DNA of 64,000 nucleotides from Ophelia neglecta (taxonomy: Eukaryota): positions 10,292,001 through 10,356,000 of the forward strand of contig OZ260665.1 in the NCBI GenBank assembly GCA_965285935.1. Direction: 5' to 3'. Shown piece after piece: positions 16,798 to 45,897 of this stretch. The notes under the pieces were generated by a model. The model was not told the DNA's origin and searched no databases. It saw only the letters and a list, made by a program, of their open reading frames with translations. The position numbers and the translations under genes were made by a program. The number at the start of each line of letters is the position of its first letter. Positions within the stretch are counted from its first letter, which is position 1.

Positions 16798-19700
16798 ATG
16801 TCTGCCTTAGGCTTCTGTCTAATGGTCTGTTTCTACTGGACGTTTGTTAGCGTTAACTGTGAATTAGATTCTACAATTCAAGGAAATACGTTCCATGGCG
16901 AATTAAAGGACATCAGAGGCAGAATGCAAATCATGGAGGCAGAAAATAAAGATCTGAGAGACGAAGTCACAGAAATCAGAACCACTATGATAAAGTTGAA
17001 GGACACGTTACTGAGTGAGTAATACTCTTTTGTAAAGTCCGGGTTCGAATCTATATGAACGCCCTTCATTCCAATAATGTATAGATATTATAAACTGTAA
17101 CCACGACAGTGCTTCCTTTTTCATACATATTGACTACCAATCGTCCCACTTTGTTGTAGAACAATTGCCTAATCGGCCAAAGGATATTCCCGACCTGGAT
17201 TTTGGTAAGAAAACGTAACAGTAAAATATAGTTATGTGTATGTATGTATATATAAACATATATATACTCCTGAAGTGCCTGATGAATTTAATAGATATTA
17301 TGCTATGTTTTAAAATGATAGACTGGTTTTTATTTAACAGGCCCGCTGCTCAGAGACTCCAGGGAAGTGACGAAAAAAAGCTACGGTAAAATTAACATAT
17401 CAAACATTCAGCAAATATTATTAGCCAGAAGGATATCAGTCTGTTTAATGTTTTTAATTCTTAATTATCCCCTTCGTGTATATTTGTGTACCACATGGCC
17501 TAGAAACACACCATTTGACATGGCGGGGGAGGGGTGAGGGGGGAGGCTTATGTGGCCTTTGTGCGATCAAGGTGAATTAATGTTCACGCTATGTGCTACA
17601 TCGAAATCTGTTTAGGCAGAGTTCTAGGCCAAGTTTGTTTGTGTTGTAAGAGCAAGGAGACGTAACTTAAACATAATATAAAAAATATATATTTTTGACA
17701 AGTTAGAAATGATGTATTGTTTTCAAAAAACGGATAGACACTCACTACCCATTTTAAGGTGTGTCATTTTTCTATGGTGCCTGCATTTGTCTATGAATGG
17801 ATTCATATCGTAGGCCAAAGAAATGAACAAACATTAAGGCAACTAAATGTTTATCCGACCAAACATATATACGAGTCAATACGCTGTTGACAGCCGTGGC
17901 CTAACGTAGATCCCCTATAGAATTACCATTCCTTAAATCATTTAGGTAGAATCTATTTGCGCTGCTAGTCACGCTTAACATACATGGGAGAAAAACACAG
18001 TTGTGATATAACGTTACATGCTAAATAGTATAGACACGCGAGACGCATTGCAAAGTTAAGAGCTTGTGGCGTCAAAAACCTTGTAAGATGACATCTTTTG
18101 ACATTATTATTCTGTAGCATTCAATTCTCTTTGTTCGATACTGCATCCATAATTTTCATAAACATGTCTATTATATGGTTCAATATCATTTCGACAGCTC
18201 TGATATCTGGGAGTGAACACAATGTGCCAGACGCGTCTTTGACCGCTTCCGCTGTGCATGAAAGCTTAGAAATATACGCCCCTAAATGTTCGAGAATTGG
18301 TGTAACAAGGCCAGGTTGTCATTCTCACCATGCATGGGTTGCAGATAAATCGCAGAAAGAAATGTGGATCCAGGTACAGTAATAAAACAGCCATGGTCGC
18401 TGTAGTTATACAGGAGAAGGTTCTGGTATCTACGCTGAATAAAACTAAATATAACTTGCTCAACTTGGACATCACATCTTGACTTCACCTTCCAATGGTG
18501 TCACAAGCTAACTTTAATCTAGCCAGAAAGAAATGTGGATCCAGGTACAGTAATAAAACAGCCATGGTCGTAACAGCCATGGTCGCTGTGTATATACAGG
18601 AGAATGTTCTGGTATCTACGCTGAATAAAACTAAATATAACTTGCTCAACCAATCAACATGACTTGCACAAACAACTGCAGATAACGCAGTCACGTCCAG
18701 TCCATTGATGAAAACGTACATCGATGTGTTTAAAACACTGGGCAATATGATATATTTTGTCATTTGTTGTAGGTCGACCTAGGAAACACTCACATTATTC
18801 AGGCCGTAGCAACTCAAGGCAGAAGTGTCTTCCATCAGTATGTGACATCATACAAGCTAGCTTCTTTTGATGGCCAACTGGTCTTTTATCAGGATGGAAA
18901 GGTATTTACTAAGGCGAAAAGCAAAATGAACATAAAAGCCACCAAGCGGGTTTGGTTAATAAAAGCAACTGTAAAAAATTTCGCGCGCACTTTATTATCG
19001 TGACTTTCGCGAACACAAGAAACGATTGAAGGGCGTGACATCACGGGTCGATCTGGTATATATTCTCAAATGGGCAGACTCGGCTATCTGTCATATCTGA
19101 GAGCCTCGGTCGAGCGAGCATCGCAGAGGCAACTCCCAATAGAAATCAACTTTAACGAGATATTACAATAATCGGTTGGAAAGGCCTCAATAAATCCACT
19201 GATGACTCAACTTTGATCCAAATACACAATGGTTGACGGTCAAATGCTCTTAGTGCCTCGACAACTTGGCAAACGCTGTAACGGATGAAAATGGCGGACA
19301 ACTTGTTAGTTGTCCAAATGGTATAGAATAGCGCGGCAAACCATCCTTTAATAGGTATTTTCCTTAGTTGACCACCATCATAAAATATTATAGGAATTAA
19401 GACATCAGCAGCAAGCTTTTAATAACCCTGTTTAGGTCAATTTCCACATGTATTATAATATATACTAGGTCATAACACTATTTTTATTTCTAATTGTACA
19501 GACTTGTTAACAACATTCACACAAGACACACGGTTCAGTTCAGGCATGCGTACAGCTCTGTACAGCTAAATTTTTCCTCTATGAAGGGTGTACTAAAACG
19601 GAAGACAGCAATCATATAAATTATCCAAAAGGACTGATAAAAGGACTGATATGTTATTTGTAATACATCTGTAGATTTAAAACATACTTATACTTGGTAA

Positions 19701-20111
19701 AGCTCGGTTTCAATATTTGGTATGACCCATCCCGATGTCGCTGTAGAAAGTTCTAACCATATTGTCTAATAATAGGCCATGAAAACAAGATACGTCCCGT
19801 CCATCACCACCTGACCTCAAACATGGTATTTGGTTTGTAGGGCAAATATTTAGTACCACAAAAATTCATGTTCTGTACTATTTTAAAAGACGTGCTTTCT
19901 TGGTTCATCAAATGATGTAACATTGATCATGCAACACTGAACTATCTGGACAACTTTTCAGGTGTTTGGAGCTAATTCTGACCGGCAGACTGTGGTGAAA
20001 CACGCCCTGAGTCCGACAATGAAGGCTCAGAGGGTTCGACTCTATGTGTTGTATTACAACAAGGTTCCTTCCATGAAATGGGAGCTTTATGGTTATCCGT
20101 GCACATGTTAG
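16798..20111 (+). CDS. Gene A1: secreted coiled-coil + discoidin (F5/8 type C) protein, 238 aa, intact
   Basis: Exons 16798-17014, 17341-17385, 18198-18373, 18773-18901, 19962-20111 (717 nt, GT-AG, phases 1,1,0,0). Hydrophobic leader MSALGFCLMVCFYWTFVSVNC; heptad region; motifs LTAS, AW, WIQVDLG, VATQGR, YVTSYKL, FGANSD, MKWELYG. Confidence 0.9.
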
Positions 20112-21778
20112 GCGTGTAAATATGAAATCAATACTGCTTTACAATACTTAACTATATTTGAAATATATTACGGTCTTTATATAAAACCTCACCTTATATC
20201 AATTATGCTAACCTAATATTCAATCAGAGCACCAAGAATGACTCAATTGTGCCAAAAACTGATTATTCTCATCTTTTAGGTCACGGAGCTGGATTCTTTT
20301 ATTATTGGAAATCCAACAATCCGTTACGGCAATTTTTCTAATTCAATCATATATGAACATTCACAACTGATTTCACGTTATATCAAAGTTTATATAATTG
20401 ATTTTAAACCAGGATGGAGTTCCGTAGTCACAGAGAACACTTATAGATAATTATCTAAAATAGAATATAACCGGAAATTTTTTTCGAGTATGATGTCTGC
20501 TGTAATGCATGTTTTTACCCAAACGCACCATTAACCAATAACATTAGCCTTGATTGCTACCCATTTAAGATATGAAAATAGTTTATTTCAAATCGAAGTT
20601 AACAACTTAGCAAGTAAATTTAGGTTGCACCAAGACGAAAAATGAGTTAAATTCAATAGATATCTAATTTAAGTATAATGTATTGTAAAAGTAATAGGGC
20701 AGAGTTCCTATATGAGGTAACTGCCGCAATAAAAAATGTTTTGTGAATATTTAATACTTGTTTTCATTACCGCCATTTCTACCAATCTATGATTCATATA
20801 ACTACATCTTATGTCTTGGGTGGTGGTTGGATTGTCTGATAATTGTGTGCAACTCATTTGGTGGACATTTCTTTTTGCCAATGCGGAAACATATTAATAG
20901 TTCTATTGTTGCTTCACATATTATATTATAAATGTACAAAGGGGTAGATGAACATGGATATATGTCCTACAAAATAAATGAGATATATTCAATTTGAAAA
21001 CGAACAAAACAAAAAGAACACTACAAAAAGTATCGCATAACAAGGAGGACGAACTCGGAGCAGGTTAAAGAAAACTCTGAGTTTAGAGTTTAAAAATTAG
21101 AAGGTTACAGTATTCGGATGGAGTGGATCAAGAGATCTCTGGTCTCTTCCTAAAAACAATGTGAAAAATTCCACACAAACAACACAGATTTGTGAAGAAA
21201 GGAATTTCAGAGAGGGGTGAGTGCTAATGGTCTATGTTTTTCTGTGACTGCCTGTTAGAATGCATTGGGGCTACGTGCCTAAAGGGTCTTGTGGTACGAG
21301 ATACGAGGGAAATACACAGAAGGTAAGCAGATACAAAACAAAAATAGTTTGAGTTGCTTTGGGACAGAGTAAGAGAGAGGGTTTTGCTACCAACATATTA
21401 ACTGAAACATTTCATTTATAAATCTGATCCCTAGCACAAAGCTTATCCATACATCTACATATAAAGTATCTCGAATCTTCCATTGTGGGTTTAACAGTTA
21501 ACCTTTCCATGTTAATTGGAGGCGGATAAATCACTGTTTGAGCGAGATTACTTATCGGTCCTTGGAGGTCTCTTTGTAATCGAATTCTGATTATTTTCTA
21601 TAAAGGATTCACTTTATGTGTTTTGATCAAATAGGGAAGGGCCAACCATTGAATCGGTCCGAATACTACCGGATCATTAACTGCAAACATCCGCTTATAT
21701 GATATAAGTTCGATCAAACAATATGAACACGTTTATTTTCGCTATGAGTTTTATTGCTTCTTCTATCTTATTTCGTAA

Positions 21779-21906
21779 GTCAATCCAGGCACCACATACA
21801 GAAACCAGAGAGTAGCAACTCATTGCAGGTATGTCTATTCCCAGTTATGACATAATACAACCTCACTTCTGATGATTTACCGCTCGCCTACTATGAAAAT
21901 GGAGAG
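21779..21906 (+). pseudogene. Relic discoidin exon 4 (orphan pseudo-exon)
   Basis: VNPGTTYRNQRVATHCRYVYSQ...LAYYENGE resembles VDLGSTHRIQRVATQGR...VYYQNGQ; 128 vs 129 nt; splice sites lost. Confidence 0.7.
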
Positions 21907-24177
21907 GGATATTTTATACAACCACGCACGGTACATAGATTAAGTTGTGTTAATATGAAAGGTGAGCGGTAATTCCATGAAGAAGAGTATGTTATACCCA
22001 AAGCTTTTTAAAGTGAGACTCGACCATAAATAGATAATTAAAGGAACATTACATTGATGATATTGAACAACAAACTATTTATCATATCATCAATACTGAA
22101 CCTGAAAATTAGATAACTGTTGGTAACAAGAGTCAGAGTACTATACTAGCTGGTTTCCGAGAATCCATTTACAATAGAGTAGTGTTGTATAATTAGATTT
22201 GGATGTTTGAGGTTTAACGATATATTAAAAAATAATACAGTTAACTTGAATCACGTCAAGACATTGACGTTGAAGTCGTTACTAAGCATATGGCTTGACA
22301 AATACTTTAATTGTTGTTTTTGTTATATCTTATCCCATTTGACATTTGTTCTAACTAAGTGTACTCTAAATCCCTGATCCGCGAGCATTTCGTGCAGGCA
22401 CAGAAGGCAAAGTGATAAATCTGTAATAATTCCAGCCACACCATTGACATGTGTGTAGTAGTATAAGTAGTATGTGCAGTAGTATAAGAGATGAATTTAA
22501 ATTACTTATCTGTCCTTGTCATAAATACCACGATTTATGACCCATTTCACGTTCAACGGTGCTTCTGGATATTTGCTTAGCTCCATACGAAGACTTATGA
22601 ATTCAGTAAGTAGATAAAAGTTCTTTGTAAGTCCAATTCGAATAACTTTTTTTTTGCACGCATGACGCATTAACTTTGTTAAGTACATAGAATTATTTAC
22701 CATGCACCGTCTGCAGGTCGCCGGAGCCATTTATTAAGGAAATTGTGATACATTTTCACTTGACGGTAGTGGAGGTCCTTTATGAATTGATTTCTTTGTC
22801 CAGCTTTATATATAAGGCATTAAAGGGGCCGGTGTGTTGCTCGAGGGGAAGCCCCATATACTAGTATTCAAGGTTGTCCGGTAACGCTTTCGCCAACTCA
22901 TACATAGTAATGTTTTTCAGTGCCTGAATTGAAATTTATTGGGTCCATATTCGTTTGACCATTACCTGAGGACTTCAAAATCGGTAGGCCACGATGCGTA
23001 CAACTGGCGCAAAAGTACCGACAATGCTTTGGGAAAAAATATAATATACTGGTTAAATCCAATATCAGAACCCAATGTTAATTGCTGAAGTGAAGCCAGA
23101 AGGCAAAACCACGAAACTTTCCTGTTGCAAACATTTTTACATGTTCTTTTCATTGTACAATATTATATTTAATTCCTTTAAGCAACTTATATATTGCTTT
23201 CAAACAATGATATATGAATAACTGAGTACCTGTCAATGTCAGCTTAGCTCCTCCATTTTAAGTGGCATAGGCAGTGGACGAAAACTGTTTGTTTGCCTTT
23301 AGTGTGTGTTTTATGGTGACCTATTACCTCCACTTGGAGTGAAAAATAATACCCACGAGCCTATTATATGGAGTCTATTGACCTAATTGAGTACTTCTAT
23401 ATATTTACTTAGCTCCATGCCAAGCTCATTACTACTGTCGTTCATAGCAAAAAACGGTCTTGAGCGATCTCTAAATCTGTTTTTGCTATATGTCAAGTTC
23501 ATAAAGGTAGTCTATAGGAAAACACTTTTTGTTCAGGTTAACTTAACGGTCGTGGGACATCTCTTTGTAAAGGAATGTCTGTACAGGTTTTGATCAATAT
23601 AAAAAAGCCTACATTGTGGCCTCTTCCCTGAATACCATGAATAACTTCAATGCCAAGTTTGTTAATCTCGTTCTAAACAAACTTCTCATTGTGAAGTTTT
23701 ACTTTTACGAGCTCTCCTTTGGAATAGATTCGAATTATACTTAATACCCATAAAGGAATCGCTGTAAGGTTTTGATAATAAAGAAGAGCCGGCACTTTTC
23801 AGGAAAGAAAATTAAGTGTTTAACACGTCCAATGTAAACTCGAAAAGTCTCGATTTCTAAATAATAGCAATAGATACTTTCCTTAAAACTAATCAGAATT
23901 TTTCGGAAACATTTAAATTTTCCGGTTATTACAAAATAAACAAATCTCCGTGGAATTGCCTGCTTAACCTACATTGTTGTATTTTCAACAAGACACCTCT
24001 AAACCGTGACAATGTTCAATGTTGTAAAGTATACTGAAATAAAATTCTTGAACATTTCATGGTGGTGTACATTTCTTGATTTACAGTATGATATCACCAG
24101 GTAGCAACGCGGCCGCCAAACAACAAACACGTTGAACTCATTTCGCTTCAGACCAGTGAGACTGATCACCAGCAAGC

Positions 24178-26904
24178 ATGTCTTCCTTTAGCGTCTGTCT
24201 GTTGGTCTGTTTCTATTGCACTCTTGTCAACATTCATTGCGAGTTTGGCTCCAACTTTGAAAAAAGAGTAATGCATGAAGATGAAAAGACAATCGGTGAA
24301 AGAATTGACCCGCTGAATATAGAACTGATGGACGCAATCATTGGAATGCACAAAATAACTAAACAGTTAGAGGCTGCTTTACTGAGTAAGTTAGGTTCAT
24401 TTTTCAATCCTTGGTTGAAGTTGGTATCCAGTATAGTTGTATAATACACACACAGTGTATGTCTTGTCAATATTTGGTCCTCCTATATTCTTTACATTTA
24501 TTATAACTTTTCCATTTTATTGCATGTTGGTTGCGAAACTCCGATTTGACAAAAGGTCTAGCCGACCTAGACCTCATTATAAATAAATTGATTAAGAAAT
24601 ATGGCGTCGGTATATATTTGTTCAATTCCTGAATTTCATAGTAATAATACGTACTTAACATGCTATGCGCAAACTAATTGACTGTATTGTATCTAACAGG
24701 ACAGTCCAGGGAAGTGACGAACAAAAGCCACGGTAAAAATAATATTTTAAACATTCAACAAATGGTAGTTGGTTTAAGGACATCAATCCACGATGTGTAT
24801 CATTCTTTGATAGCTCCTTTTCATGCATATGAAAGCAACACGATGCCTAAGTATAATTTAAAAGGCAATGCGCAATTTTTGCTTCTTAGATTCTTTTTTG
24901 TCCACATGACAAGTTTGTTATTTTGTATGTTATGAACCTATGGTATTAAGCCATTTTTATTATCAGGCAAATGCCATTTGAAATGGGGCATAGGGGGGCT
25001 GAGGGGATACAATCTATCCTCTCATACACATGAATGATTCATACTAGGTCTGTGCTATAAACAAATATTGTTTGAAGGGACTCCACCGCTAACATTAATA
25101 TTGCTTTCCCTTATGGTGCCTGAGATCGTCTATGATTTAGTTTAAAACATGAGCAGCTATAAGTACATACACTATAAGAAAGTAAATATTTACCTAGCCA
25201 GACAAGTAGACATCTAAAGGCATTATCAAACAAGACTACAATATTGGGATATCAAAACCACCATGAAAGGTATATTTGTCACGCTAGACATGCTCCTCAT
25301 ATAAGCACCAAATCGTCTTCTCAATATAGCTTCTGAATATTCAACACATCTGCCATATTGTTAAATCTTGATTCTGGAATAATACTTAACAGCAAGAAAA
25401 TCATTATGTCACAAACATTGAAACATAGCCAAAATTTTAATTAGGTCATAGTTTTACAAGCCTTCTACGCTAGGTTCAGCTTTTTGCTATATCGTATAAA
25501 CCATGGTTACTACTTTGATAAATAAAAGCTTTCAACTGAATAAGATGTATTGATTTATTCCTTCGCAGCCTTGATTTCTGGGACTGAACACCGCGTGCCT
25601 GATGATGCCTTGACGGCGTCTAGCATGTGGGATAACCGGAAAGATTGTGGCCCTCAGTGCTCAAGGCTCGGTGTCCCGAAACCTACAGGTTGTCTTAGCT
25701 ACGCATGGCTTGCAAATAGACTGATCAAAGATTTGTGGATACAGGTAGAAAACAAACAGCGGGTTGCCTAAAAGAAAAAGTAGACAAAATATAAAGTACG
25801 GCTATTTTCATGGTATTTCGACTGTCTTTAGGTTTGGCCATAAAACACGAAAGTGGAAGTTGAGATCGACCAGTCCAGTGTAAATTCTGCTCAATTTGTC
25901 AGCAACCAGATAGAATATAGGCAAAACAAGATAACTCTTTGTGTAACATACTATTTACCAAAGTGTTTCACAATGAATATATGATTTCAGTAATGTTTGA
26001 ATTCATTTAATTCGGCGTTATAAGCTAAATCCTAAGAAGCGTAATGCAAAGTCCACATTGTATTTCACATAAATATAGTTTAAAATAATAAGCATGCATA
26101 CAGTAGCCAGATGTTCAAGGATCTACCATTCATTCTGTTCGAAGATTTCAGCGGTTCTTATATAAACTGCACAGTTCTTCCGTTTCCACATGGTTTCGGT
26201 TTGCTTTAATTGATTATTCTAAATAAATAACTTTGCTTTTTTTCTGCCCGAGTATTCACTTTCGTTGTTTTTAGCTGATTAGAGATATTTTGTCAAGTAT
26301 TATTTATATTTTAATTTTTGCAGGTTGATCTTGGCTCAACACACATAATCCAGAGAGTTGCAACCCAAGGCAGAGATATCGGTGACCAGTTTGTGAAATC
26401 ATACAAACTGGCGTATCTCGATGAAAAGCTTGTCTACTATCAGAATGGACAGGTAACTTATATAATCGCAAGTTTAATCACTAAACGTGTTTGGCTTAAA
26501 TTGGTCAAACGGGCTGAACAGGTTACCATGGATGCGATCCAATAATATTAGCAAATATTGCCTTTCAACATACAGTTGTCGCTAATGTTGACTTAGAAAT
26601 TCCAGATATGTTCGCAATCTAATTTGTCCACCACATATATCTCAGATAGTGGCTGCCTGTGCTTTGACTTTAACCAATGCTTGAAGCGGGACTCGACCGT
26701 GCCGACTGTACTTGTAAACCTTAAACACATGACCCTTCAATTTGTTAGGTTTTCCCTGCAAATTCAGTCCCGGAGGCTGTTGTGATACACACACTGACTC
26801 CCACAATGAAGGCTCGAACGGTTCGACTCTACGTATTGAATTACAACAATAACCCTTCTTTGAGATGGGAGCTCTATGGTTACCAGTGCACGTGCACGTG
26901 CTAG
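24178..26904 (+). CDS. Gene B1: secreted coiled-coil + discoidin protein, 233 aa, intact
   Basis: Exons 24178-24385, 24700-24732, 25569-25744, 26324-26452, 26749-26904 (702 nt); same intron phases as A1; ends WELYGYQCTCTC*. Confidence 0.9.
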
Positions 26905-27722
26905 GTGCGTACGCATGCGAATAATAGTTTCTAAAACGCTTAACAAAATTTAAAATCTTATACTATTATAGTTAGCCACTGACAGATATTACCCTGCATA
27001 TTTGAAATTAAGATAGCAGATACTAAGCGGTGTGAATACTGAGATACTTTCTCTTTATTACTGACGCATTCGGAGACAATTCTTTTCGTCCTTTCAGCTA
27101 CCGGTAGTGGTCGTCCATTTACAAGGAATCAACTATTACTGTTTTGAAAGCTTACATCAATAATATAATAGTGCTATTGAATAAATAAGTTCTATATTTG
27201 ATATAGTAGCTAACCCCACTGATCATGAGTGGTGTGTTTTACCGTGACCCAGCCAGATGTAGTAAATTCCCTATGACTCATTGCCCAACATTGTATTTAT
27301 CGCAAAACGTGAAGAAAATAAAGTCCTTAGTTCGAACCAAAAATTAAGAACAAACAGAAATTGGGTTATTTCTTCAGAATCTAACTTTAAATAAAAAGCG
27401 CCCAAAATTGCACGTAACAGGAAAAATAATATAATTATAGCTCCTGTCCGAAGTCAACGGTAAATATTACCAATATATTGATTGCTATGTCATAAGCTTT
27501 AAGTATACAAGAAAATAGATAACAATGCATTTAATGTGTAATGGATTATTAATTGATTTATGTCTTACTTCTGAGGGTTTTTTTTCTAATCACAATTTTG
27601 ACAATGTTTATCATCTATAAAAGAGGGACTCGCTTTATTATAAATAATTTTGATCGCGTCTGGTTCTTGTTAAATATTCAGTGATGCATAATACATGAAA
27701 TTATTTGGCCAACATTTATATA

Positions 27723-27901
27723 CTGTGAAACCTGTCTTAAAGACCACCTCTATAATCAGACCACCTGTCTATTCAGACCAATAATTTAAGAACCCAGTTG
27801 AACACTTACAATGTAAAAATAGCCTGTCTATACAGACCACCTCCCTTTTCAGACATGTATTTGCCAGTTCCTTATGTGGTCTTAATTCACAGGTTTCACT
27901 G
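27723..27901. mobile_element. Tc1/mariner-type MITE (copy 2)
   Basis: Near-identical to 14868-15046. Confidence 0.75.
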
Positions 27902-34497: not shown

Positions 34498-34625
34498 GTC
34501 AATCAAGGCACCACATACAGAAACCAGAGAGTAGCAACTCATTGCAGGTATGTCTATTCCCAGTTATGACATAATACAACCTCAGTTCTGATGATTTACC
34601 GCTCGCCTACTATGAAAATGGAGAG
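34498..34625 (+). pseudogene. Relic discoidin exon 4 (duplicate of 21779-21906)
   Basis: Near-identical copy in the second duplication unit. Confidence 0.7.
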
Positions 34626-36884
34626 GGATATTTTATACCACCACGCACGGTACATAGATTTAGTTGTGTTAATATGAAAGGTGAGCGGTGAAGAAGAGTA
34701 TCTTATACCCAAAGCTTTTTAAAGTGAGACTCGACCATAAAAAGATAATTAAAGGAACATAACATTGATGATAATGAACAATAAACTATTTTATTTATCA
34801 TATCATCAATAATGAACCGGAAAATTAGATTACTGTGAGTAACATGTGTAAGAGTACTAAACTAGCTGGTTTCCGAGAATCCATTTACAATAGAGTAGTG
34901 TTGTATAATTAGATTTGGATGTTTGAGGTTTAACGGTATAGCTATTGAATATGAAGACAGTTAACTTGAAGCAATTCAAGACATTGACGTTGAAGTCGTT
35001 ATTAAGCATATGGCTAGACAAATACTTTAATTGTTTTTTTTTTTAAATCTTATCCCATTGGGTATTTTTTTATTCTAGCAGGCACAGAAAGTGCTAAATC
35101 TGTAATAATTCCAGCCATACCATTGACATGTGTGCAGTAGTATAAGTAGGATGTGCAGTAGTATAAGAGATCAATTTAAATTAATTTCTTTCTTTGTCAT
35201 GAATATCACGATTTATGACCCATTGCCCGTTGAACAATGCATCTCGATATTTGCTTAGCTCCATACAAAGACTTATGAATTCAGTAAAAAGTTCTTTGTA
35301 TGCCTTTAAGTGCCGTGAGTCCTATTCGAATAACTAGTTTTTTTGCAACGAAATGAAAATATATGAGGCAATAACTTTGTTAAGTACATAGAATTATTTA
35401 CCTCTCACCGTCTGCAGGTCGTTGGAGCCACTTGTGAAGGAAATTGTGATACATTTTCACTTGACGGGAGTGGCGGTCCTTTTTTTAATTAATTTCTTTG
35501 TCCAGCTTTATATACAATGCATTAAAGGGATCGGTGTGTTGCTCGAGGGGAAGCCCCATATAGTAGTATTCAAGATTGTCCGGTACCGCCTTCGTCATCT
35601 CATACATAGTAATGTTTTTCAGTGCCTGAATTGACATTTATTGGGTCCATATTCGTTTGACCATTACCTGAGGACTTTAAAATGGGTAGTCCACGATGCG
35701 TACAACTGTCGCAAAAGTACCGACAATGCTTTGGTAAAAAATATAATATACTGGTTAAATCCAATATTAGAACCCAATGTTAACTGCTGAAGTGAAGCCA
35801 GAAGGCAAAACCACGAAACTTTCCTGTTGCAAACATTTTTACATGTTCTTTTCATTGTACAATATTATATTTAATTCCTTTAAGCAACTTATATATTGCT
35901 TTCAAGCAATGATATATGAATAACTGAGTACCTGTCATTGTCAGCTTAGCTCCTCCATTTTAAGTGACATAGGCAGTGGACGAAAACTGTTTGTTTGCCT
36001 TTGATGGGTGTTTTATGGTGACCTATTACCTCCACTTGGAGTGAAAAATGATACCCACGAGGCTATAATATGGAGTCTATTGACCTAATGGATTACTTAT
36101 ATATATTTACTTAGCTCCATGCCAAGCTCATTACTACTGTCGTTCATAGCAGAAACGGTCTTGAGGGATCTCTGAATCTGTTTTTGCTATATGTCAAGTT
36201 CATAAAGGTATTCTAAAGGAAAACACTCTTTGTTCAGGTTAACTTAACGGTCGTGGGACATCTCTTTGTAAAGGAATGACTGTATAGGTTTTGATCAATA
36301 TAGAAAAGCCTACACTGTGGCGTCTTACCTGGAAAACACGAACAACTTCAATGCCAAGTTTGTTAATCTCGTTCTAAACAAACCCTTTTGTGATTTTTTT
36401 CTTTTACGAGCTCTCCTTTGGAATAGATTCGAATCATACTTATTACCCATAAAGGAATCGCTGTAAGGTTTTGATAATAAAGTAGAGCTGGCACTTTTCG
36501 GGAAAGAAAATTAAGTGTTTAACACGTCAAATGTAAACTCGACAACTCTCGATTTCTAAATAATAGCAATAGATACTTACCTTAAAACTAATCAGAAATT
36601 TTCGGAAGCAGGAAACATTTAAAAAATTCCGGTAATTACAAAATAAACAAATCTCCGTGGAATTGCCTGCTTAACCTACTTTGTTGTATTTTCAACAAGA
36701 CACCTCTAAACCGTGACAATGTTCAATGTTGTAAAGTATACTGAAATAAAATTCTTGAACATTTCATGGTGGTGTACATTTCTTGATTTACAGTATGATA
36801 TCACCAGGTAGCAACTCGGCCGCCAGGTGACAGGCACGTTGAACTCATTTCGCTTCAGACCTGTGAGACTGATCACCAGCAAGC

Positions 36885-39783
36885 ATGTCTTCCTTTAGGT
36901 TCTGTCTGTTGGTCTGTTTCTATTGCACTCTTGTCAACATTCATTGCGAGTTTGGCTCCAACTTTGAAAAAAGAGTAATGCATGAAGATGAAAAGACAAT
37001 CGGTGAAAGAATTGACCCGCTGAATATAGAACTGATGGACGCAATCATTGGAATGCACAAAATGATTAAACAGTTAGAGACTGCTTTACTGAGTAAGTTA
37101 GGTTCATTTTTCAATCCTTGGTTGAAGTTGGTATCCAGTATGGTTGTATAATACACACACGGTGTATGTCATGTCAATATTTGGTCCTTCTATATTCTTT
37201 ACATTTATTATAACTTTTCCATCTTATTGCATGTTGGTTGCGAAACTCCAATTTGACAAAAGGTCTAGCCGACCTTGACCTCATTATAAATAAATAGATT
37301 AAGAAATATGGCGTCGGTATATATTTGTTCATTTCCTGAATTTAATAATAATAATACGTACTTAACATGCTATGCTCAAACTAATTGACTGTATTGTATC
37401 CAACAGGAGAGTACAGGGGAGTGACAAACAAAAGCCACGGTAAAAATAACATTTTAAACATTCAACAGATGGTACTTGGTTTAAGAGCATTAATCCACGA
37501 TGTTGATCATACTTTGATAGCTCCTTTTCAGGCATATGAAAGCAACACGATGTCTAAGTATAATTTAAAAGGTCATGAGCAATTTTTGCTTCTTAGATTC
37601 TTTTTTGTCCACATGACAAGTTTGTTCTTTTATTTACATAATATTTTGTATGTTATGAACCTATGGTATTAAGCCATTTTTATTATTAGGCATATGCCAT
37701 TTGAAATGGGGCATAGGGGGGCTGAGGGGGATACAATCTATCCTCTCATACACATGAATGATTTATACTTGGTCTGTGCTATAAACAAATATTGTTTGAA
37801 GGGAATCCACCGCTAACATTAATATTGTATTCCCTTGATGGTGCCTGAGATCGTCTATGATTTAGTTTGAAGCATGAGCAGCTATTAGTAAACGAACAAT
37901 AAGAAAGTAAATATTCACCGAGCCAGACAAGTAGACGTCTAAAGGCAAAATCAAATAAGACTACAATATTGGGACGTCCTCAAAACCGCCATGAAGAGTA
38001 TATTTGTCACGCTAGACACGTTCCTCATATATGCACCAAATTGTCTTCTCAATATAGCTTCTGAATATTCAACACATCTGCCATATTGTTAAATCTTGAT
38101 TTTGGAATAATACTTAACAGCAAAAAAATCATCATGTCACAAACATTGAAACATAGCCAAGTTCATTTTCAAAGAGGTGAAGTTTGGTAACATAGCCAAG
38201 TTTTAAGGTCAAAGAGTTACAAACTAATTTTAATTAGGTCAAAGTTTTACAAGCCTTCTACGCTAGGCTCAGCAGTTTTGCTATATCGTATAAACCATGG
38301 TTACTACTTTGATAAATAAAAGCTTTCTACTCAATAAGATGTATTGATTTATTCATTGCAGCCTTGATTTCTGGGACTGAACACCGTGTGCCTGATGAGG
38401 CCTTGACGGCGTCTAACAGTTACCAGAAAGATTGTGGCCCACAGTGCTCAAGGCTCGGTGTCCCGAAACCTAGAGGTTGTCTTAGCTACGCATGGGTTGC
38501 TAATAGACAGATCAAAGATTTGTGGATCCAGGTAGAAAACAAATAGCGGGTTGCCTAAAAGAAAAATTAGACAAAATCTAAAGTACTGCTATTTTCATGG
38601 TATTTCGACTGTCTTTAGGTTTGACCATGAAACACGCAATTGGAAGATGAGGGCGACAAGTCCAGTGTAAATTTTGCTCAATTTGTCATCAACCAGATAG
38701 AATAAAGGCATATATGAATGGATATTGACCCAACTCACAAAGACAAAAAGTTATACATGGGTGCTGTTTGAGTTAACATAATGTACCGGTAAAACAAGAT
38801 AACTCTGTGTGGCATTCTGTTTTCCAAAGTGTTTCACGATTAATATACCATTACAGTAATGTTTGAAATCATTTAATTTAGCATTAGAAGCTAAATTCTA
38901 AGGAGCGTAATGTAAGGTCCACCTTATATTTTAAAATAACATCATGCATGCTGTAGCCTGATGTTCAATGATCGACCTTTGAATTGATCCGAAGATTTCG
39001 GCTATATAAACTGCACAGTTCTTCCGAGTCCACATGGTTTCGGATTAATTTAATTGATTATTCTAAATAAATTATTTTGCTTTATTTCTGCCCGAATATT
39101 CACTCCCGTTGTTTTTACATGCTAAGGGTTATGTTGTCAAGTAATATTTATATTTTGATTTTTTGCTGTGCGTGGTGTTCATACGATCTTATTACTTCAT
39201 AGGTTGATCTTGGTTCAACACACAGAATCCAGAGAGTTGCAACCCAAGGCAGAGATATCGATGGCCAGTTTGTGAAATCATACAAACTGGCGTATGGCGA
39301 TGAAAATGTTGTCTACTATCAGAATGGACAGGTAACTTAAATAATCGCTAGTTTAATCACTAAACGTGTTTGGCTTAAATTGGTCAAACGGGCTGAACAA
39401 GTTACCATGGATGCGATCCAATAATATTAGCAAATATTGCCTTTCAACATACAGTTGTCGCTAATGTTGACTTAGAGATTCCAGATATGTTCGCAATCTA
39501 ATTTGTCCACCACATATATCTCAGATAGTGGCTGCCTGTGCTTTGACTTTAACCAATGCTTGAAGCGGGACTCGACCGTGCCGACAGTATTTATAAACCT
39601 TAAACACATGGCCCTTCAATTTGTTAGGTTTTCCATGCAAATTCAGTCCCGGACGCTGTTGTGATTCACACACTGACTCCCACAATGAAGGCTCGAAAGG
39701 TTCGACTCTATGTTTTGAATTTCCAATATCACCCTTCTTTGAGATGGGAGCTCTATGGTTACCAGTGCACGTGCACGTGCTAG
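36885..39783 (+). CDS. Gene B2: secreted coiled-coil + discoidin protein, 231 aa, intact
   Basis: Exons 36885-37092, 37407-37439, 38362-38531 (6 nt shorter than B1, in frame), 39203-39331, 39628-39783 (696 nt). Confidence 0.9.
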
Positions 39784-40597
39784 GTGCGTACGCATGCGAA
39801 TAATAGTTTCTAAAACGCTTAACAAAATTTAAAATCTTATACTATTATAGTTAGCCACTGACAGATATTACTCTGCATATTTGAAATTAAGATTAAGAAA
39901 CGGTATGAATACTGAGATACTTTCTCTATATTACTGACGCATTCGGAGACAATTCTTTTTGTCCTTTCAGCTACCGGTAGTGGTCGTCCATTACAAGGAA
40001 TAAACTATTACTGTTTTGAAAGCTTACATCAATAATATAATAGTGCTATTGAATAAATAAGTTCTATATTTGATATAAAGTAGCATTAACCCCACTGATC
40101 ATGAGTGGTGTATTTTACGGTGGTCCAGCCAGAAGTAGTAATTTCCCTATGACTCATTGCCCAACATTGTATTGATAGCAAAACGTGAAGAAAATAAAGT
40201 CCTTAGTTCGAACCAAAAATTAAGAACAAACAGAAATTGGGTTATTTCTTCAGAATCTAACTTTAAATAAAAAGCACCCGAAATTGCACGTAACAGGAAA
40301 AATAATATAACTTTAGCTCCAGTCCGAAGTCAACGGTAAATGTTACCAATATATTGATTGCTATGTCATAAGCTAAAAGTATACAAGAAAGTTGATAACA
40401 ATGCATTAAATGTGTAATCGATTATTAATTGATACATGTATAACTTCTTAGAGTTTTGTTCTAATCACAATTTTGACAATGTTTATCGTCTATAAAAGAG
40501 GGACTCGCTTTATTATAAATAATTTCGATCGCATCTGGTTCTTGTCAAATATTCAGTGATGCATAACACACGAAATTATTTTACCAACATTTATATA

Positions 40598-40776
40598 CTG
40601 TGAAACCTGTCTTGAAGACCACCTCTATAATCAGACCACCTGTCTATTCAGACCAATAATTTAAGAACCCAGTTGAACACTTACAATGTAAAAATAGCCT
40701 GTCTATACAGACCACCTCCCTTTTCAGACCAGTATTTGCCAGTTCCTTAGGTGGTCTTAATTCACAGGTTTCACTG
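40598..40776. mobile_element. Tc1/mariner-type MITE (copy 3)
   Basis: Near-identical to 14868-15046. Confidence 0.75.
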
Positions 40777-41499
40777 TTTATGCAAATAACCACTAATAAG
40801 AAATGTTGCCGATGTAAGATCCATGATCATTTTCTAGAGGATCTGATGATAAATAGAGAAGTAGTGAGCGCTTTCTGCTGTAGAATTTACTGATTTTACA
40901 CGATTATACAGCCTATATTAGCCTTTATCAATTTGAATTACTCACTGATACATACCCTATGTGCATAGAGCGATACTTAGCGATATTTACTTACCCTTAC
41001 CCATACCATGTACAAGGCATTCATTCATAGGTCAAGACTCTTGTATGTCTTCGTTAATCCGATTTGAATACCTTCATTGATGATATATTTTGAAATAGAA
41101 TAAAGATATATCACAAATTGAAGGACTTGAAGTATTTACCTCTCTACATTTCTAGGCCATTGAAGCCATTTGTATTCAAAAGCTCTTTAAGGCGGTACTC
41201 TTGAATCAATTTCTTTCGCCAATGTCATATAAAAGGCCAACATAGAAGTATTTACCCGATAGTGTAATGTCGAAGCGCGAGTTTAAGGTAAATGTTTGCC
41301 AAGCATAATATAAACCCCTCCTATCCAAACGTCTATAGGGTAGCAAAAGAAATACAATTTTCGCCGGGTTATATTGTCAACTTGGACATTTTTATTTGTA
41401 AGAATAACTAAAATAATAGGCTCATATTAGAAAATATTCTTTCTTTTCACAACAGCATTCTATTCTTTACCAAGCTAGGACAATTCTGGAGAGGAAATA

Positions 41500-41885
41500 A
41501 ATTCCTAATTACCTACTTCCTATCATAGTATATAAATTTCCTTCTACCTGATTCCTATCATAGCTAGTCGCTTCCTATCTGCTTACTTCCTATCATAGAA
41601 AATCAATTCTTGTCTTTCTCCTTTCTGTCTGAAACAATTCCTTACTACCTAATTTCTATCATATTACATCAGTCCCAATATCCTGCTACCTTTCATAGTA
41701 AATCTTATCAAAGTAGATCAACGCCCAGCTACCTACTTCCTATCATAGTAAATCGATTCCTGACTACCTAATTTCTATCATATTAAATCATTTCCCATCA
41801 TCCTACTACCTTTCATAGTATATACTTCTTATCAAAGTAAATCAACTCCTTACTACCTACTTCCTATAAAGTAAATCAACGCCTG
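41500..41885. repeat. Degenerate tandem repeat (ctacctacttcctatcatagtaaatcaa-like) upstream of A/C-type genes
   Basis: Related arrays at ~15770-15900, ~16430-16580, ~28610-28740, ~29270-29420. Confidence 0.6.
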
Positions 41886-42066
41886 TTTAATTAATTCCTA
41901 ACAGGTCGTGATTGCAATCTGGAAACCAAGTCTACAAACTTTTCCTGCATGTACATGCAACATTTCATGCTTTACATTATAAAATCTAGTTAGCAACTTA
42001 GTTTACACAGAGCAGACACGTTCACTTCATTTGACTTGCGACCAGTGAACCTATACACAACCCAAA

Positions 42067-45000
42067 ATGTTTCGCTTAGGCTGCTGTCTAATTGTCTCTT
42101 TCCATTGCATTATACTTAATGTCCACTGCGAATTAGACTCAACCATCAAAAGAAATATATTGCATGCAGGACTCCGGGAAGTCAGTGACAGAGTGCAGAC
42201 CGTCGAAGCAAACAATGAAGATCTGAGGGACGAAGTCACAGAAATCCGTACCAGAATGAGAAAGTTAGAGGATGCTCTACTGAGTGAGTTCATGTCCCTT
42301 ACAAGATCTAAGTTAGAATCCTATAATGTGCTCCTTATTCTAATATTCCAGCTATTATATTACCGTTGGAATTAACGTTTATTTTCCTTAAAACATGTTG
42401 GTAGCATTTCATTCTATTTGATGTTATAGAACAATTGCCTAATCGACCAAAAGTTCTGCAAGAAGTGGATTTTGGTAAGAAATTGCAATTTTTAAAATAT
42501 AGACATAAATAATATGTATTTATATATAGGCGAGTAATGCTATCTGTAGATTTGCGTACCCATGGTAAACATTGATTATAATGGTTTATATTCTGTGAAA
42601 AATAGGAAATCTGCTCAGAGATTCCAGAGAAAAGACAAAAAGAAGCTACGGTAAAAACCTTCAAGTATTCAGCAAACTTTAATGCACGATTGTAAGCAAA
42701 CATTTGTCTTTCTCAAATGTAAATACCCTTCATCGTACTTCTTTAGATATATACTCTCGGATAGGAATGGATTCTTTCGGTAGAAGTCAACAAGCAAATT
42801 GTAATGTAACTTGATACCAACAAGCATATATGCCAATATCACTGCATTTAACCAATGTATATGAGATTAGAGTAGGTTGACAAACATTCAAACGACTTAG
42901 GTGGCGGGTTCATTGCCATGCGAAATTTATCTAGTTCTTTTCAAACAAATAAAACATTGCGATGATATTATTTACTTTCCCACAAATCCTCTTAATGCTA
43001 CCTATTCAGGAGAAATTCGACTTAAAAGCCAATGTCCCAGCTTTACATACAAACCATTGGAACCTAGCCAATTACGCCCGGGTGCACACATTGTACTTAA
43101 GTAAAGGCTATCGTTTCGCAATTGCTGTAACTGAGTCGAAGTCATAAATCTTGTAAAATGGCCATAAAACTATGTTACTGTAACTTAACCAAGATAATCG
43201 GTTACAAATGTTACAACCTAGTGAAAGTGGTGTAACAACAATCCTTATGACATTGCCGATAACATTGCGATGACATTGCCGATGACATTGCCGATGCCAT
43301 TGCGCCACAAGCTTTGTTCATCGGATCCCAATGACTGTAACCTAGTTGGAAATATCCTGTTCCAATCCTTTGAACCAAACTTAGTTCATGGTGTCACAAG
43401 CTAACTTTAATCTAGCCAGATTATAGGCTGCTACAATGACGGCCTTATTAACTTCGCCTCTGTCTGTTATATAACAACCAGTACCCTTCATTGAAATTGC
43501 AGTTTTATGCTATCCGTATGTAGGTATGAACTAGGCAGTACTAACCTTAGTTATAAAACGGAGTTGTGCTGTACGTAGTTGTGTGGATATGAACTGAGTA
43601 GTACTACACGTAGTTGTTTGGATATGAACTGAGTAGTACTACACATAGTTGTGTGGATATGAACTGATTAGTACTACACGTATTTATTTAGATATGAACG
43701 GAGTAGTTCTATACGTAGTTGTGTTGGTATGTACTGTTCAATAGTATTACAAACTTTTACATAGTAAGTCTTCAACTCCTAATTCTAATTGGAGCAGTGG
43801 ACACATATATGGGTTTAAATTGGTTTAGAGTTTAAATCATGTAATCAGATCTCGGCCACAGCATTGGCTGATTGCTAAAGTAAGAGTTTGAAACAGAAGC
43901 GTTGTAGAATTGAATTAGTATGTCTGCATGTTCCAAAGCCGCCGAATGATAAAACCGTTCAAAACACAAACTTGTGTTTAGCATTATACGATTTTGCTCC
44001 CCAAATACCACTAAATACCACTGTTCTGATGACGTAAAACTGTACATCATATATTTTCTCTTTTGGTAAAAATTGAGGGAAGAGGGTACATTCAACATAA
44101 CTTTTCCCAATTATCAGTATCATGCACACTGTTGTAATCGATGTACATAAAATGGAGAAACCTATTTATTTCTTCTATGACAGCCTTGATTTCTGGTACT
44201 GACCACTATGTGGCTGATTCGGCTTTAACTGCGTCCAATGTGTATGCAAACAGAGCCGATTGTGGCCCACGGTGCTCGAGGTTGGGTGTACCAAAACCCA
44301 AGGGATGTGGGAGCTACTCGTGGATAGGACAGGTACCTGCAGGGGAATGGTGGATACAGGTAAAACAAATAAAAGGAAGAATCATATGTTCACAAAAGAA
44401 ATTTGAATTTTTAAGAGACATATAAAACGATTTTGTGAAACTTTATTAAAAATAAGGGATTAAAACAAGAGTCATGGGTGCATTTGTCCCTACTTATTTC
44501 GTTTTTAGACCACGATTTAAGCCCCCAGCACCCACCACCCCAAACCATCCCCTTAACCCCAACCCTTCCCCAAACACTCTCATCGTACCTATATAATTCA
44601 AATATGCTTCTTTTTCATGGTATTTTGTGTTGATACTTTTATTTGTTTTAGGCTGATCTCGGGAAATTCATGACAATTGACAGCGTAGCCACCCAAGGGA
44701 GAGGAGATCTTCCGTACTCCCAATATGTGACTTCATATAAACTGGCTTCCTACGACGGGAATGAGCTTCGCTACTATTTGGATCAAATATCTGAGCACCA
44801 TAAGGTTATATTGAATCATTTATTTAACGACCATTCTGTGTTGGCCTGCGGTTGGGATGTTTAGACTGGTCTTATTTCTGCAGCAATTTGCATCTTTTCT
44901 GCTGAAATTAGCCGGTCCAGTTTCCTATATCGCCGATTGTGCGGGCAAATCCAAAAACCTGGTGACAAAACTGTCGGCTTATGCTCTGCGAGCTGTCAGT

Positions 45001-45897
45001 ATGGAGCCTACCAATACACCCCGCTGATGTAGCCGATGATTTCTGGTTTTTTTTTTTTGTATTATCAATACTGATGACACGTGTGAGCGCACGTGGGGGC
45101 GGCAAGGTTTACTGGCCTCGGTTAGGTGTTCCGAACTTATTGCCAATTCGTGGGATTATTTAGTTCGGCGTGATAAATTACTTTCGGCAGATCACAGCAT
45201 GTTGAAAAAATCCAGAAAAAAAAACCTCAATCGCTATCTTGCCCTGAACAATGAACTGTGGCCGTATTGAAGTACAAATTGTTGTTCAGCAGAATGCACT
45301 GGGCGTTTTATTATGATGTATTAACGGCCTACCGCTGCAGCACCTTCGAGCGCTTTAAAATGTGGATTGAGGTGCCTTCACTAGGATTTAAATTTAGAAG
45401 ATTCAGGCGATAATCGGGCATTCCGGTATGTTTGCTCGGCCCATTCTTAACGGTATCTTAAATGCCAATCGTGAAATTGCGGCTTCTTTAACAGAGACTA
45501 CAAACTCGGGGCTGTGATAGGATCCGCTAAAATAGGAAAGGAAATACCACAATTTAAAAATAATAGTTCTAGCAAAGGCACCCTTAGGTAAAAAAAATAC
45601 TTGTCCCAACGGCTATTGCAGGGGAACTCGCTAATAATTATTTTCTAGATGTTTATTTTAATAAATACATAGTTTGATGAGCAAATATCTCAATTGTTTT
45701 GCAAAATGCACATGAAGATTAATAAGGCTTTCCTATGATTATTTCAGGTATTTGGTGGTAATTCGGACATGAACACTGTGGTCAAACACACCCTTCGTCC
45801 CACAATGAAAGCTCGTAGGGTTCGACTGTATGTGGTATACTACCACTGGTATCCATCCTTGAGATGGGAGCTGTATGGTCATCAAGGCGACTGTTAA
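42067..45897 (+). CDS. Gene C1: secreted coiled-coil + discoidin protein, 246 aa, intact
   Basis: Exons 42067-42283, 42606-42650, 44184-44359, 44652-44804, 45748-45897 (741 nt); WWIQADLG, VATQGR, FGGNSD, LRWELYGHQGDC*. Confidence 0.9.
43555..43735. repeat. 35-bp intronic minisatellite
   Basis: gtagttgtgtggatatgaactgagtagtactacac repeated about five times. Confidence 0.8.

What the first reader, a model, noticed from the sequence alone, without database searches (positions are those of the whole stretch)
18198..45897. Amino-acid changes between recent paralogs concentrate in the predicted ligand-binding loops
Seen: loop after LTAS: A1 AVHESLEIY / A2 AVLVSSN.Y, B1 SMWDNRKD / B2 NSYQKD (2-aa indel), C1 NVYANRAD. 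Before AW: SHH/PDH. After TQGR: SVFHQ/SFYHQ, DIGDQ/DIDGQ, DLPYSQ/DLPFSQ. Last loop: YNKVP/YYQHP, YNNNP/FQYHP, YHWYP/YNWCP. In A1 vs A2 exon 5 all three replacements are in consecutive codons of that loop and the other four differences are synonymous. Known: the equivalent loops form the binding face in factor V/VIII C2, lactadherin, neuropilin b1 and DDR. Inference: diversifying selection on binding specificity, resembling hypervariable regions on a discoidin scaffold. A2 and C2 are pseudogenes, so some of their changes may be neutral.
Basis: partly seen in the sequence, partly recalled or inferred. Interest (0 to 1): 0.8.

Follow-up and report, generated by a model that had tools for sequence, protein, structure and literature searches.

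The report
Fast-evolving binding loops in discoidin paralogs
A young cluster of duplicated invertebrate genes for small secreted discoidin-domain proteins has changed mainly in the loops that bind ligand in related proteins, which suggests but does not prove selection for new binding specificities.

Summary
The window holds a tandem and inverted cluster of genes for secreted proteins with a signal peptide, a coiled-coil stalk and one F5/8-type-C (discoidin) domain. A1, B1, B2 and C1 are intact. A2 and C2 are pseudogenes.

In seven of eight recent pairs, replacements pile up in four short loops (hypergeometric P from 1e-8 to 8e-3). Purely synonymous codon changes do not (7 of 38 in loops, the share expected).

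By HMMER alignment, the loops correspond to factor VIII C2 residues F2196-F2200, Q2213-R2215, S2250-T2253 and W2313-Q2316. These contact membrane and form one antibody epitope, so they lie on one face.

Loop replacement rates are about 3 times noncoding divergence and about 2 times gene-wide dS. On recent branches omega for the loops is 2.2 (P=8.5e-5). M2a and M8 site models are significant, and five of the six M2a sites lie in the four loops and the sixth in the adjacent fifth loop.

The omega>1 signal rests on multi-hit codons. It disappears when those codons are masked or when the loops get their own rate.

This matches the known pattern of bivalve coiled-coil C1q families, on a new scaffold. 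No RNA or ligand evidence was available.

The parts
16798..20111 (+). Gene A1, intact, 253 aa. Exons: 16798-17014 (signal peptide and coiled coil), 17160-17204, 17341-17385, 18198-18373 (LTAS exon), 18773-18901 (TQGR exon), 19962-20111 (last exon).
   Evidence: Open spliced frame with GT-AG at every junction. The exons match consecutive parts of PF00754.
18251..18277 (+). A1 loop 1 (spike 1, alignment columns 18-26). The other A1 loops are loop 2 at 18305-18331, loop 3 at 18824-18835 and loop 4 at 20052-20069.
   Evidence: Mapped to factor VIII F2196-F2200, Q2213-R2215, S2250-T2253 and W2313-Q2316. A1 against A2 shows 14 mismatches and 1 gap in these 84 nt, against 4.4 expected from noncoding DNA.
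24178..26904 (+). Gene B1, intact, 233 aa. Exons: 24178-24385, 24700-24732, 25569-25744, 26324-26452, 26749-26904. Loops: 25622-25648, 25676-25702, 26375-26386, 26839-26856.
29636..32942 (+). A2, pseudogene copy of A1. Exons: 29636-29808 (44-nt deletion), 29955-29999, 30110-30154, 30967-31141 (1-nt deletion in loop 1, near 31038), 31370-31498, 32793-32942.
   Evidence: The conceptual reading has 3 stops. The deletions show in the alignments and are present in short-read contigs.
36885..39783 (+). Gene B2, intact, 231 aa. Exons: 36885-37092, 37407-37439, 38362-38531, 39203-39331, 39628-39783. Loop 4 at 39718-39735 carries 5 nucleotide changes in 4 codons on the B2 branch.
42067..45897 (+). Gene C1, intact, 261 aa. 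Exons: 42067-42283, 42430-42474, 42606-42650, 44184-44359, 44652-44804, 45748-45897.
61843..64000 (-). C2, inverted pseudogene copy of C1. The TQGR exon is at 62974-62822 and the last exon at 61992-61843. The LTAS exon is deleted, the acceptor of the last exon is CG, and exon 1 lies just beyond the window (L031 267-46).
14670..41599 (.). Segmental duplication. The unit 14670-28711 (A1 and B1) is repeated at 27524-41599 (A2 and B2). Noncoding divergence is 5.7%.

Best explanation
The region is a young, still-turning-over cluster of genes for small secreted proteins. Each has a signal peptide, a coiled-coil stalk of about 45 residues (probably for oligomerisation) and one discoidin (F5/8 type C) domain. 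This is a lectin-like recognition architecture. After recent duplications (about 6% noncoding divergence and 5-10% synonymous divergence in the window's A, B and C pairs), the beta-sandwich scaffold stayed under purifying selection. Replacements, often several nucleotides in neighbouring codons, accumulated in the four to five loops at one end of the domain, which bind ligand in solved relatives. The most likely cause is positive, diversifying selection for new binding specificities among paralogs. Shown here: the gene models, the concentration of replacements, the homology of the loops to known binding spikes, and a loop replacement rate above two neutral yardsticks. Inferred: secretion, oligomerisation, ligand binding by these loops, and selection as the cause.
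For: A1, B1, B2 and C1 have intact spliced frames. Replacements are concentrated in the loops with P from 1e-8 to 8e-3 in 7 of 8 pairs, while purely synonymous codons are not (7 of 38 in loops, matching the 18% share of codons). The scaffold pN is 0.004 in A1-A2 although A2 is now dead, so A2 was constrained until recently. Loop pN is 0.19-0.22 against 0.057 for noncoding DNA. Resampling noncoding segments of the same sizes gives P=0.003 for A and 0.014 for B. At the codon level P=5.6e-5 and 8e-4. A branch-by-partition GY94 model gives omega for the loops of 2.2 on recent branches (LRT 15.5, P=8.5e-5), and 2.25 with intact genes only (P=4e-4). M2a against M1a gives P=9e-4 (11 sequences) and 0.006 (9 sequences). 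M8 against M7 gives P=1e-4, and M8 against M8a gives P=0.001. The flagged sites are columns 23, 42 (39 in the smaller set), 51, 77, 80 and 143. These correspond to factor VIII M2199, R2215 or S2216, N2224, S2250, T2253 and H2315. Those residues are, or adjoin, membrane or BO2C11-epitope contact residues (PMC9643838, PMC11808648). The dead copy C2 shows no loop excess. No donor sequence for the derived loop-4 versions of A1 or B2 exists elsewhere in the genome.
Against: Over the whole family tree omega for the loops is 1.02. Masking the codon columns that have two or more nucleotide differences within a clade gives omega for the loops of 0.96. With a loop-specific rate multiplier (estimated at 1.4-1.7), omega is 1.36-1.44 and omega=1 is not rejected. 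Clusters of 5 or more mismatches in 15 nt are as frequent per kilobase in noncoding DNA as in exons. On the B2 branch two synonymous changes sit next to the loop-4 cluster, giving 7 changes in 24 nt. In B1-B2 the loops at the opposite end also changed. The very youngest duplicates (D1/D1', D3/D3') differ at 3 replacements, none of them in loops. The codon models were my own implementation, not PAML or HyPhy. There is no RNA, protein or ligand evidence.
Confidence: 0.55

Rival explanations
1. The loops are simply unconstrained and the scaffold is constrained. Replacements then concentrate in the loops by default. The apparent excess over neutral comes from clustered, multi-nucleotide mutations and a somewhat higher local mutation rate, not from selection.
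For: Family-wide omega for the loops is 1.02. Omega is 0.96 once multi-hit codons are masked. Omega=1 is not rejected when the loops have their own rate. Noncoding triplets carry 1.7 times more double hits than independent mutation predicts, and mismatch clusters are common in noncoding DNA. Pseudogenes are frequent in the family.
Against: Neutral loops should diverge like noncoding DNA (5.7%), not at 19-22%. Resampling noncoding DNA, which carries the same clustered mutations, still gives P=0.003 and 0.014. Purely synonymous codon changes show no excess in loops, so there is no independent sign of a hot spot. The excess recurs in the same four or five short segments in three gene lineages (A, B, D).
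Confidence: 0.27
2. Short gene-conversion or templated patches, copied from other paralogs or alleles, replaced the loop segments. This would produce clustered multi-nucleotide differences, with or without selection keeping them.
For: Changes come in tight clusters that sometimes include synonymous changes, for example 7 changes in 24 nt on the B2 branch and 6 in 15 nt between A1 and A2. A PHI test on the whole family gives P=0.03.
Against: No other place in the 762-Mb assembly holds the derived A1 or B2 loop-4 20-mers, even allowing 2 mismatches above the control level. Exon-by-exon trees keep the same recent clades. PHI is not significant in the subsets that hold the recent pairs (P=0.37-0.38).
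Confidence: 0.1
3. The pattern is an artefact of assembly errors, wrong exon models or misalignment in gap-rich loops.
For: The gene models have no RNA support. Loop 1 and loop 2 contain small indels, and the cysteine of A is offset by one column.
Against: Short-read contigs reproduce the A2 exons and both deletions exactly. All junctions are GT-AG and all frames are open. Loops 3 and 4 of the A and B pairs align without gaps and show the same pattern.
Confidence: 0.03

Closest known systems
Bivalve secreted C1q-like type II proteins (signal peptide, coiled coil, globular C1q), as described for Crassostrea virginica (PMC6835236)
   Same: Both have a small secreted architecture with a coiled-coil stalk and one jelly-roll recognition domain. 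Both expand by tandem duplication. In both, most sites are under purifying selection and about 5-10% of sites show episodic positive selection.
   Different: The recognition domain here is a discoidin (PF00754), not C1q. This family is small (about 13 copies on one chromosome) rather than hundreds. Here the fast sites can be mapped onto a well-characterised binding face.
C2 domains of coagulation factors VIII and V, and lactadherin C2 (PDB 1d7p, 1czs, 3bn6)
   Same: The fold is the same: the model of relative P0015 matches factor VIII C2 at TM 0.86-0.89 and rmsd about 2 A. The conserved motifs TASS, AW, W-QVD, TQGR and R-E-GC-like are shared. The variable loops here align with the membrane-binding spikes.
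   Different: Those domains bind phosphatidylserine through hydrophobic spike tips and sit inside large multidomain proteins. Here the spike residues are polar or aromatic and the ligand is unknown. The N-terminal cysteine of the canonical N-to-C disulfide is absent, and there is an extra cysteine pair between spikes 1 and 2.
Discobody, an engineered factor VIII C2 domain with randomised loops that binds integrin (PDB 4pt6, hit 50)
   Same: Both use the discoidin spikes as antibody-like variable loops on a fixed scaffold.
   Different: The discobody was engineered in vitro. Here the variation is germline and lies between natural paralogs.
Dictyostelium discoidin II (PDB 2vm9)
   Same: It is the best solved-structure match to the TQGR exon and the last exon. 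Its loop-4 region, YNNHISLRWELY, is almost the same as YNNNPSLRWELY in B1.
   Different: Discoidin II carries an added H-type lectin domain and has no coiled-coil stalk. It is a very distant organism, so the similarity reflects conservation of the domain.
Oyster sperm bindin F-lectin repeats (Moy et al. 2008 PNAS; recalled from memory, listed in the references of PMC8878817)
   Same: A structurally related beta-sandwich lectin fold with positive selection on its binding face and multi-copy diversification.
   Different: That domain is an F-type lectin, and the context is a reproductive protein with polymorphic repeat numbers. I did not test this comparison here.

Membership tests
F5/8 type C (discoidin) domain, Pfam PF00754 | Match to the family profile across the domain | tested here: met
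   Single exons match consecutive parts of the profile: positions 38-74 (E=8e-6, 26.4 bits), 45-82 and 87-126. Each exon alone is just under the 28.2-bit cut-off. The joined protein was not scanned. The exons hit discoidin II, factor V/VIII, lactadherin, DDR and neuropilin chains. Relatives P0015 and P0017 hit them at E of 1e-17 to 1e-43.
F5/8 type C (discoidin) domain, Pfam PF00754 | Eight-stranded beta-sandwich with protruding loops at one end | tested here: inconclusive
   The AF2 model of database relative P0015, with the window exons as alignment rows, has pLDDT 91.7 and matches factor VIII C2 at TM 0.86-0.89. The window proteins themselves could not be folded because joined models are not accepted.
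F5/8 type C (discoidin) domain, Pfam PF00754 | Disulfide linking a cysteine at the domain start to one at its end | tested here: not met
   The residue before ALISG is S-Y-A or S-H-A with no cysteine, whereas relative P0011 has C-Y-G-E-Q-LISG. C-terminal cysteines (CTC, CTCTC, GDC) are present. This is a variant within the fold and does not exclude membership.
Families of secreted recognition proteins under diversifying selection (FREP, C1qDC or lectin type) | Signal peptide, oligomerising stalk and a single recognition domain | tested here: inconclusive
   The N-terminus is hydrophobic and is followed by a heptad-like charged helix with weak hits to coiled-coil families. I did not run a dedicated signal-peptide or coiled-coil predictor.
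Families of secreted recognition proteins under diversifying selection (FREP, C1qDC or lectin type) | Sites with dN/dS>1 located on the binding surface | tested here: inconclusive
   Met under standard models. Not met when multi-hit codons are masked or when the loops have their own rate.
Families of secreted recognition proteins under diversifying selection (FREP, C1qDC or lectin type) | Expression in immune or secretory tissue and binding to non-self ligands | not testable with these tools
   No RNA run holds the locus. Only three DNA-type runs of one sample were found.

The most novel reading that the evidence does not exclude
The family is a natural counterpart of engineered 'discobodies'. 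It would be a germline repertoire in which the four or five spikes of a discoidin domain act as CDR-like hypervariable loops, diversified by short multi-nucleotide patch events that preferentially hit or are preferentially kept in the loops, giving each new paralog a new specificity within a few percent of neutral divergence.
Probability: 0.15. Interest if true: 0.8.

Novelty: new variant of a known kind. Interest (0 to 1): 0.45.

Why it matters
Expanded families of secreted lectin-like proteins with fast-evolving binding sites are a main way in which invertebrates broaden recognition without antibodies. So far this is documented for fibrinogen-related, C1q, C-type and F-type lectin scaffolds.

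Here the same pattern appears on a discoidin scaffold, in a small, tractable cluster with three intact young paralogs (B1, B2, B3), two further intact genes (A1, C1) and internal pseudogene controls. The binding face of this fold is well mapped by factor VIII, lactadherin, neuropilin and DDR structures, so the fast sites make direct predictions for loop-swap experiments.

The case also shows how strongly omega>1 calls on young paralogs depend on multi-nucleotide changes.

Tried and rejected
- **Single-sequence AF2 of P0015** failed with pLDDT 34. It was replaced by an alignment-based model.
- **The LTAS exon alone** found no solved structure at E of 1 or less, so its loops were mapped through relative P0017.
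- **The representative search** with the B1 LTAS exon gave only 23 hits. Most were exon-sized ORFs, and no full-length annotated orthologue was found.
- **One look-up of a related ORF (P0001)** returned a 1.1-kb contig holding only that exon, so orthologue-based codon analysis was dropped.
- **No RNA run was found**, so splice junctions and expression stay unverified.
- **Gene conversion from an extant paralog** was tested by a genome-wide pattern search for two derived loops. No donor was found.
- **A family-wide partition model** did not show omega>1 for the loops.
I redid the step by coordinates.
- **Literature searches** found no paper on positive selection in discoidin loops of an invertebrate multigene family.
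- **The organism is not identified.** The nearest Atlas cluster to relative P0011 is mostly echinoderm, which is only a hint.
Full report
**What is there**

The window is G000:C8:10292001-10356000 of a 762-Mb animal genome. A self-comparison shows a segmental duplication: 14670-28711 is repeated at 27524-41599 at 92-95% identity. It also shows an inverted pair, 42334-46442 against 64000-60864. Each unit carries genes of one family.

From open frames, conserved blocks and splice sites I built the following models:
- A1: 6 exons, 253 aa.
- B1: 5 exons, 233 aa.
- B2: 5 exons, 231 aa.
- C1: 6 exons, 261 aa.

All have GT-AG at every junction and no internal stop. Each protein has a hydrophobic N-terminus, a charged heptad-like helix, one or two 33-45-nt mini-exons, and a discoidin domain split over three exons. 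I call these exons L (LTAS), T (TQGR) and Z (last).

Searches were made exon by exon, by reference. Joining was done only inside scripts, for frame checks and codon alignment.

Single exons match consecutive parts of PF00754 and hit solved discoidin domains.

**Pseudogenes**

A2 has a 44-nt deletion in exon 1 and a 1-nt deletion inside loop 1. Together these give three stops before the frame is restored. Short-read contigs from the same sample reproduce both deletions exactly, so they are not assembly slips.

C2 lacks the L exon, and the acceptor of its last exon reads CG.

**Further family members**

Genome searches and fetched loci add:
- B3, just past the window on the minus strand, with all five exons.
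- A lone C-like exon 1.
- D1, D2, D3 and two near-identical duplicates (D1', D3') at 3.63 and 3.93 Mb.
- E at 6.75 Mb.
- A fragment at 3.53 Mb.

The genome holds at least 150 more distant discoidin exons. This agrees with earlier notes from this scan on other discoidin expansions.

**The observation**

I defined four loops by their conserved flanking motifs: columns 18-26, 36-44, 76-81 and 140-145.

Replaced codons that fall in these loops:

| Pair | In loops / replaced | P |
|---|---|---|
| A1-A2 | 11 / 12 | 1e-8 |
| B1-B2 | 11 / 21 | 6e-5 |
| B1-B3 | 10 / 18 | 8.1e-5 |
| B2-B3 | 8 / 16 | 0.0014 |
| D1-D3 | 11 / 25 | 8.2e-4 |
| D2-D3 | 9 / 23 | 0.0083 |
| D1-D2 | 13 / 22 | 2.4e-6 |
| C1-C2 | 3 / 10 | 0.098 |

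Purely synonymous codon differences are not concentrated in loops. Over four independent pairs, 7 of 38 lie in loops, which equals the loops' 18% share of codons.

**Are these the binding loops?**

HMMER aligns the Z exon of B1 without gaps to factor VIII C2. This puts Y-N-N-N opposite W2313-V-H-Q2316. It aligns the T exon to lactadherin C2, putting D-I-G-D opposite D80-F81-G-H. The L exon was mapped through relative P0017, which shares the GPQC and GC-AW cysteine pattern and aligns without gaps to factor VIII 2178-2229.

The loops therefore correspond to F2196-F2200, Q2213-R2215, S2250-T2253 and W2313-Q2316. The stretch after AW (columns 47-54) corresponds to R2220-K2227.

Published work names M2199-F2200, L2251-L2252 and W2313-H2315 as needed for membrane binding, with Q2213 and R2215 at the membrane (PMC9643838). 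The epitope of the single antibody BO2C11 is listed as S2250-T2253, F2196-F2200, R2215, R2220, Q2222-V2223 and H2315-Q2316 (PMC11808648). All five loops therefore lie on one face.

A confident AF2 model of relative P0015, with the window exons as alignment rows, has pLDDT 91.7. Its spike 1-3 equivalents lie in non-strand segments, and spike 4 forms a beta-hairpin tip whose turn is at columns 143-145. It matches factor VIII C2 at TM 0.86-0.89.

**Is it more than relaxed constraint?**

Noncoding divergence between the two A-B units is 5.7%. Gene-wide pS is 0.08-0.09.

Loop pN is 0.185 in A1-A2 and 0.218 in B1-B2. Scaffold pN is 0.004 and 0.039. The near-absence of scaffold replacements in A1-A2 means A2 was constrained until recently.

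I drew sets of noncoding segments of the same sizes as the loops, which keeps the natural clustering of mutations. This gives P=0.003 for A and 0.014 for B. Counting each codon only once gives P=5.6e-5 and 8e-4 against noncoding triplets.

With my own GY94 likelihood code:

| Test | Result |
|---|---|
| Omega, loops, recent branches (four loops) | 2.2, LRT 15.5, P=8.5e-5 |
| Omega, factor VIII contact-equivalent columns | 2.5, P=1.8e-5 |
| Omega, loops, intact genes only | 2.25, P=4e-4 |
| M2a against M1a | P=9e-4 (11 sequences), 0.006 (9 sequences) |
| M8 against M7 | P=1e-4 |
| M8 against M8a | P=0.0013 |

Sites with posterior probability above 0.5 are columns 23, 42 (39 in the smaller set), 51, 77, 80 and 143. 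These correspond to factor VIII M2199, R2215 or S2216, N2224, S2250, T2253 and H2315.

The dead copy C2 shows no loop excess, with omega for the loops about 0.8.

**Why the selection claim is not settled**

- Over the whole family tree omega for the loops is 1.02. Saturation on long branches may contribute to this.
- Masking the 20 codon columns that have two or more nucleotide differences within a clade brings omega for the loops on recent branches to 0.96. This test is harsh, because truly selected sites would be the ones masked. It does show that the signal rests on multi-hit codons.
- Giving the loops their own rate multiplier (estimated at 1.4-1.7) yields omega of 1.36-1.44, not different from 1.
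- Noncoding triplets carry 1.7 times more double hits than independence predicts. Clusters of 5 or more mismatches in 15 nt are as common per kilobase in noncoding DNA as in exons.
- On the B2 branch, loop 4 shows TAC AAC AAT TAC changed to TTC CAA TAT CAC, with two synonymous changes just upstream. That is seven changes in 24 nt on a branch of about 2.5% divergence. It looks like one or a few complex events.
- In B1-B2 the loops at the far end of the domain also changed (pN 0.16).
- The three replacements in the youngest duplicates (D1/D1', D3/D3') are not in loops.

**Gene conversion**

Exon-wise trees keep the same recent clades. PHI gives P=0.03 for the whole set and is not significant for the subsets holding the recent pairs. 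The derived loop-4 20-mers of A1 and B2 have no other copy in the assembly, even allowing 2 mismatches beyond control level. Conversion from an extant paralog is therefore unlikely. An allelic or lost donor cannot be excluded.

**Verdict**

Diversifying selection is the best single explanation. For neutrality to hold, four or five separate short segments that coincide with the binding face in three gene lineages would all have to be mutation hot spots, and purely synonymous changes give no sign of that.

The formal omega>1 evidence is nonetheless model-dependent. The pattern matches what is known for bivalve coiled-coil C1q families (PMC6835236). The scaffold and the small undescribed family are new. 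The organism is unidentified; the nearest Atlas cluster to relative P0011 is mostly echinoderm.

Noticed in passing
window 18338-18464 and 18524-18650: The A1 intron just after the LTAS exon holds a tandem duplication of about 186 bp that A2 has only once (31121-31247 matches both copies).
   Followed up: partly
window 18969-19730 against 31568-32567: The intron between the TQGR exon and the last exon of A1 and A2 is not homologous over about 0.8-1 kb. This suggests different insertions in the two copies.
   Followed up: no
window 12265-13124: A block of overlapping direct repeats at 92-96% identity, offset by about 160-270 bp. It looks like a short satellite or tandem array upstream of the duplicated unit.
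   Followed up: no
L039 4954-5085 and 8359-8571 (G000:C8, about 3.53 Mb): A stray A-like last exon whose homology stops exactly before codon 142, the first hypervariable codon of loop 4. A lone B-like exon 1 (91.5% identical to B1) lies 3 kb away. Contigs from this copy showed up as loose ends at 32888.
   Followed up: partly
L031 8227-8006 (just beyond the window end): A lone C-like exon 1 (85% identical to C1) with no discoidin exons downstream, lying next to the intact B3 gene.
   Followed up: no
L034 652-861: Exon 1 of D2 has an in-frame stop inside the signal peptide (MSSLG*CLL), so D2 may be another pseudogene although its discoidin exons are open.
   Followed up: no
window 30308-31026: Short-read contigs show a second haplotype with 11-12 differences in 719 bp of A2 intron (about 1.6%), and none inside the A2 LTAS exon. 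The sampled individual is highly heterozygous.
   Followed up: no
window 56562-56779 and 59731-59958: A 220-bp direct repeat at 95% identity in a GC-richer stretch (43-45%) between C1 and C2. I did not examine it.
   Followed up: no
window 39700-39735: On the B2 branch there are seven nucleotide changes within 24 nt. Two are synonymous (columns 137, 138) and five are replacement changes (columns 141-144). No donor exists elsewhere in the assembly. This may be a single complex mutational event.
   Followed up: partly
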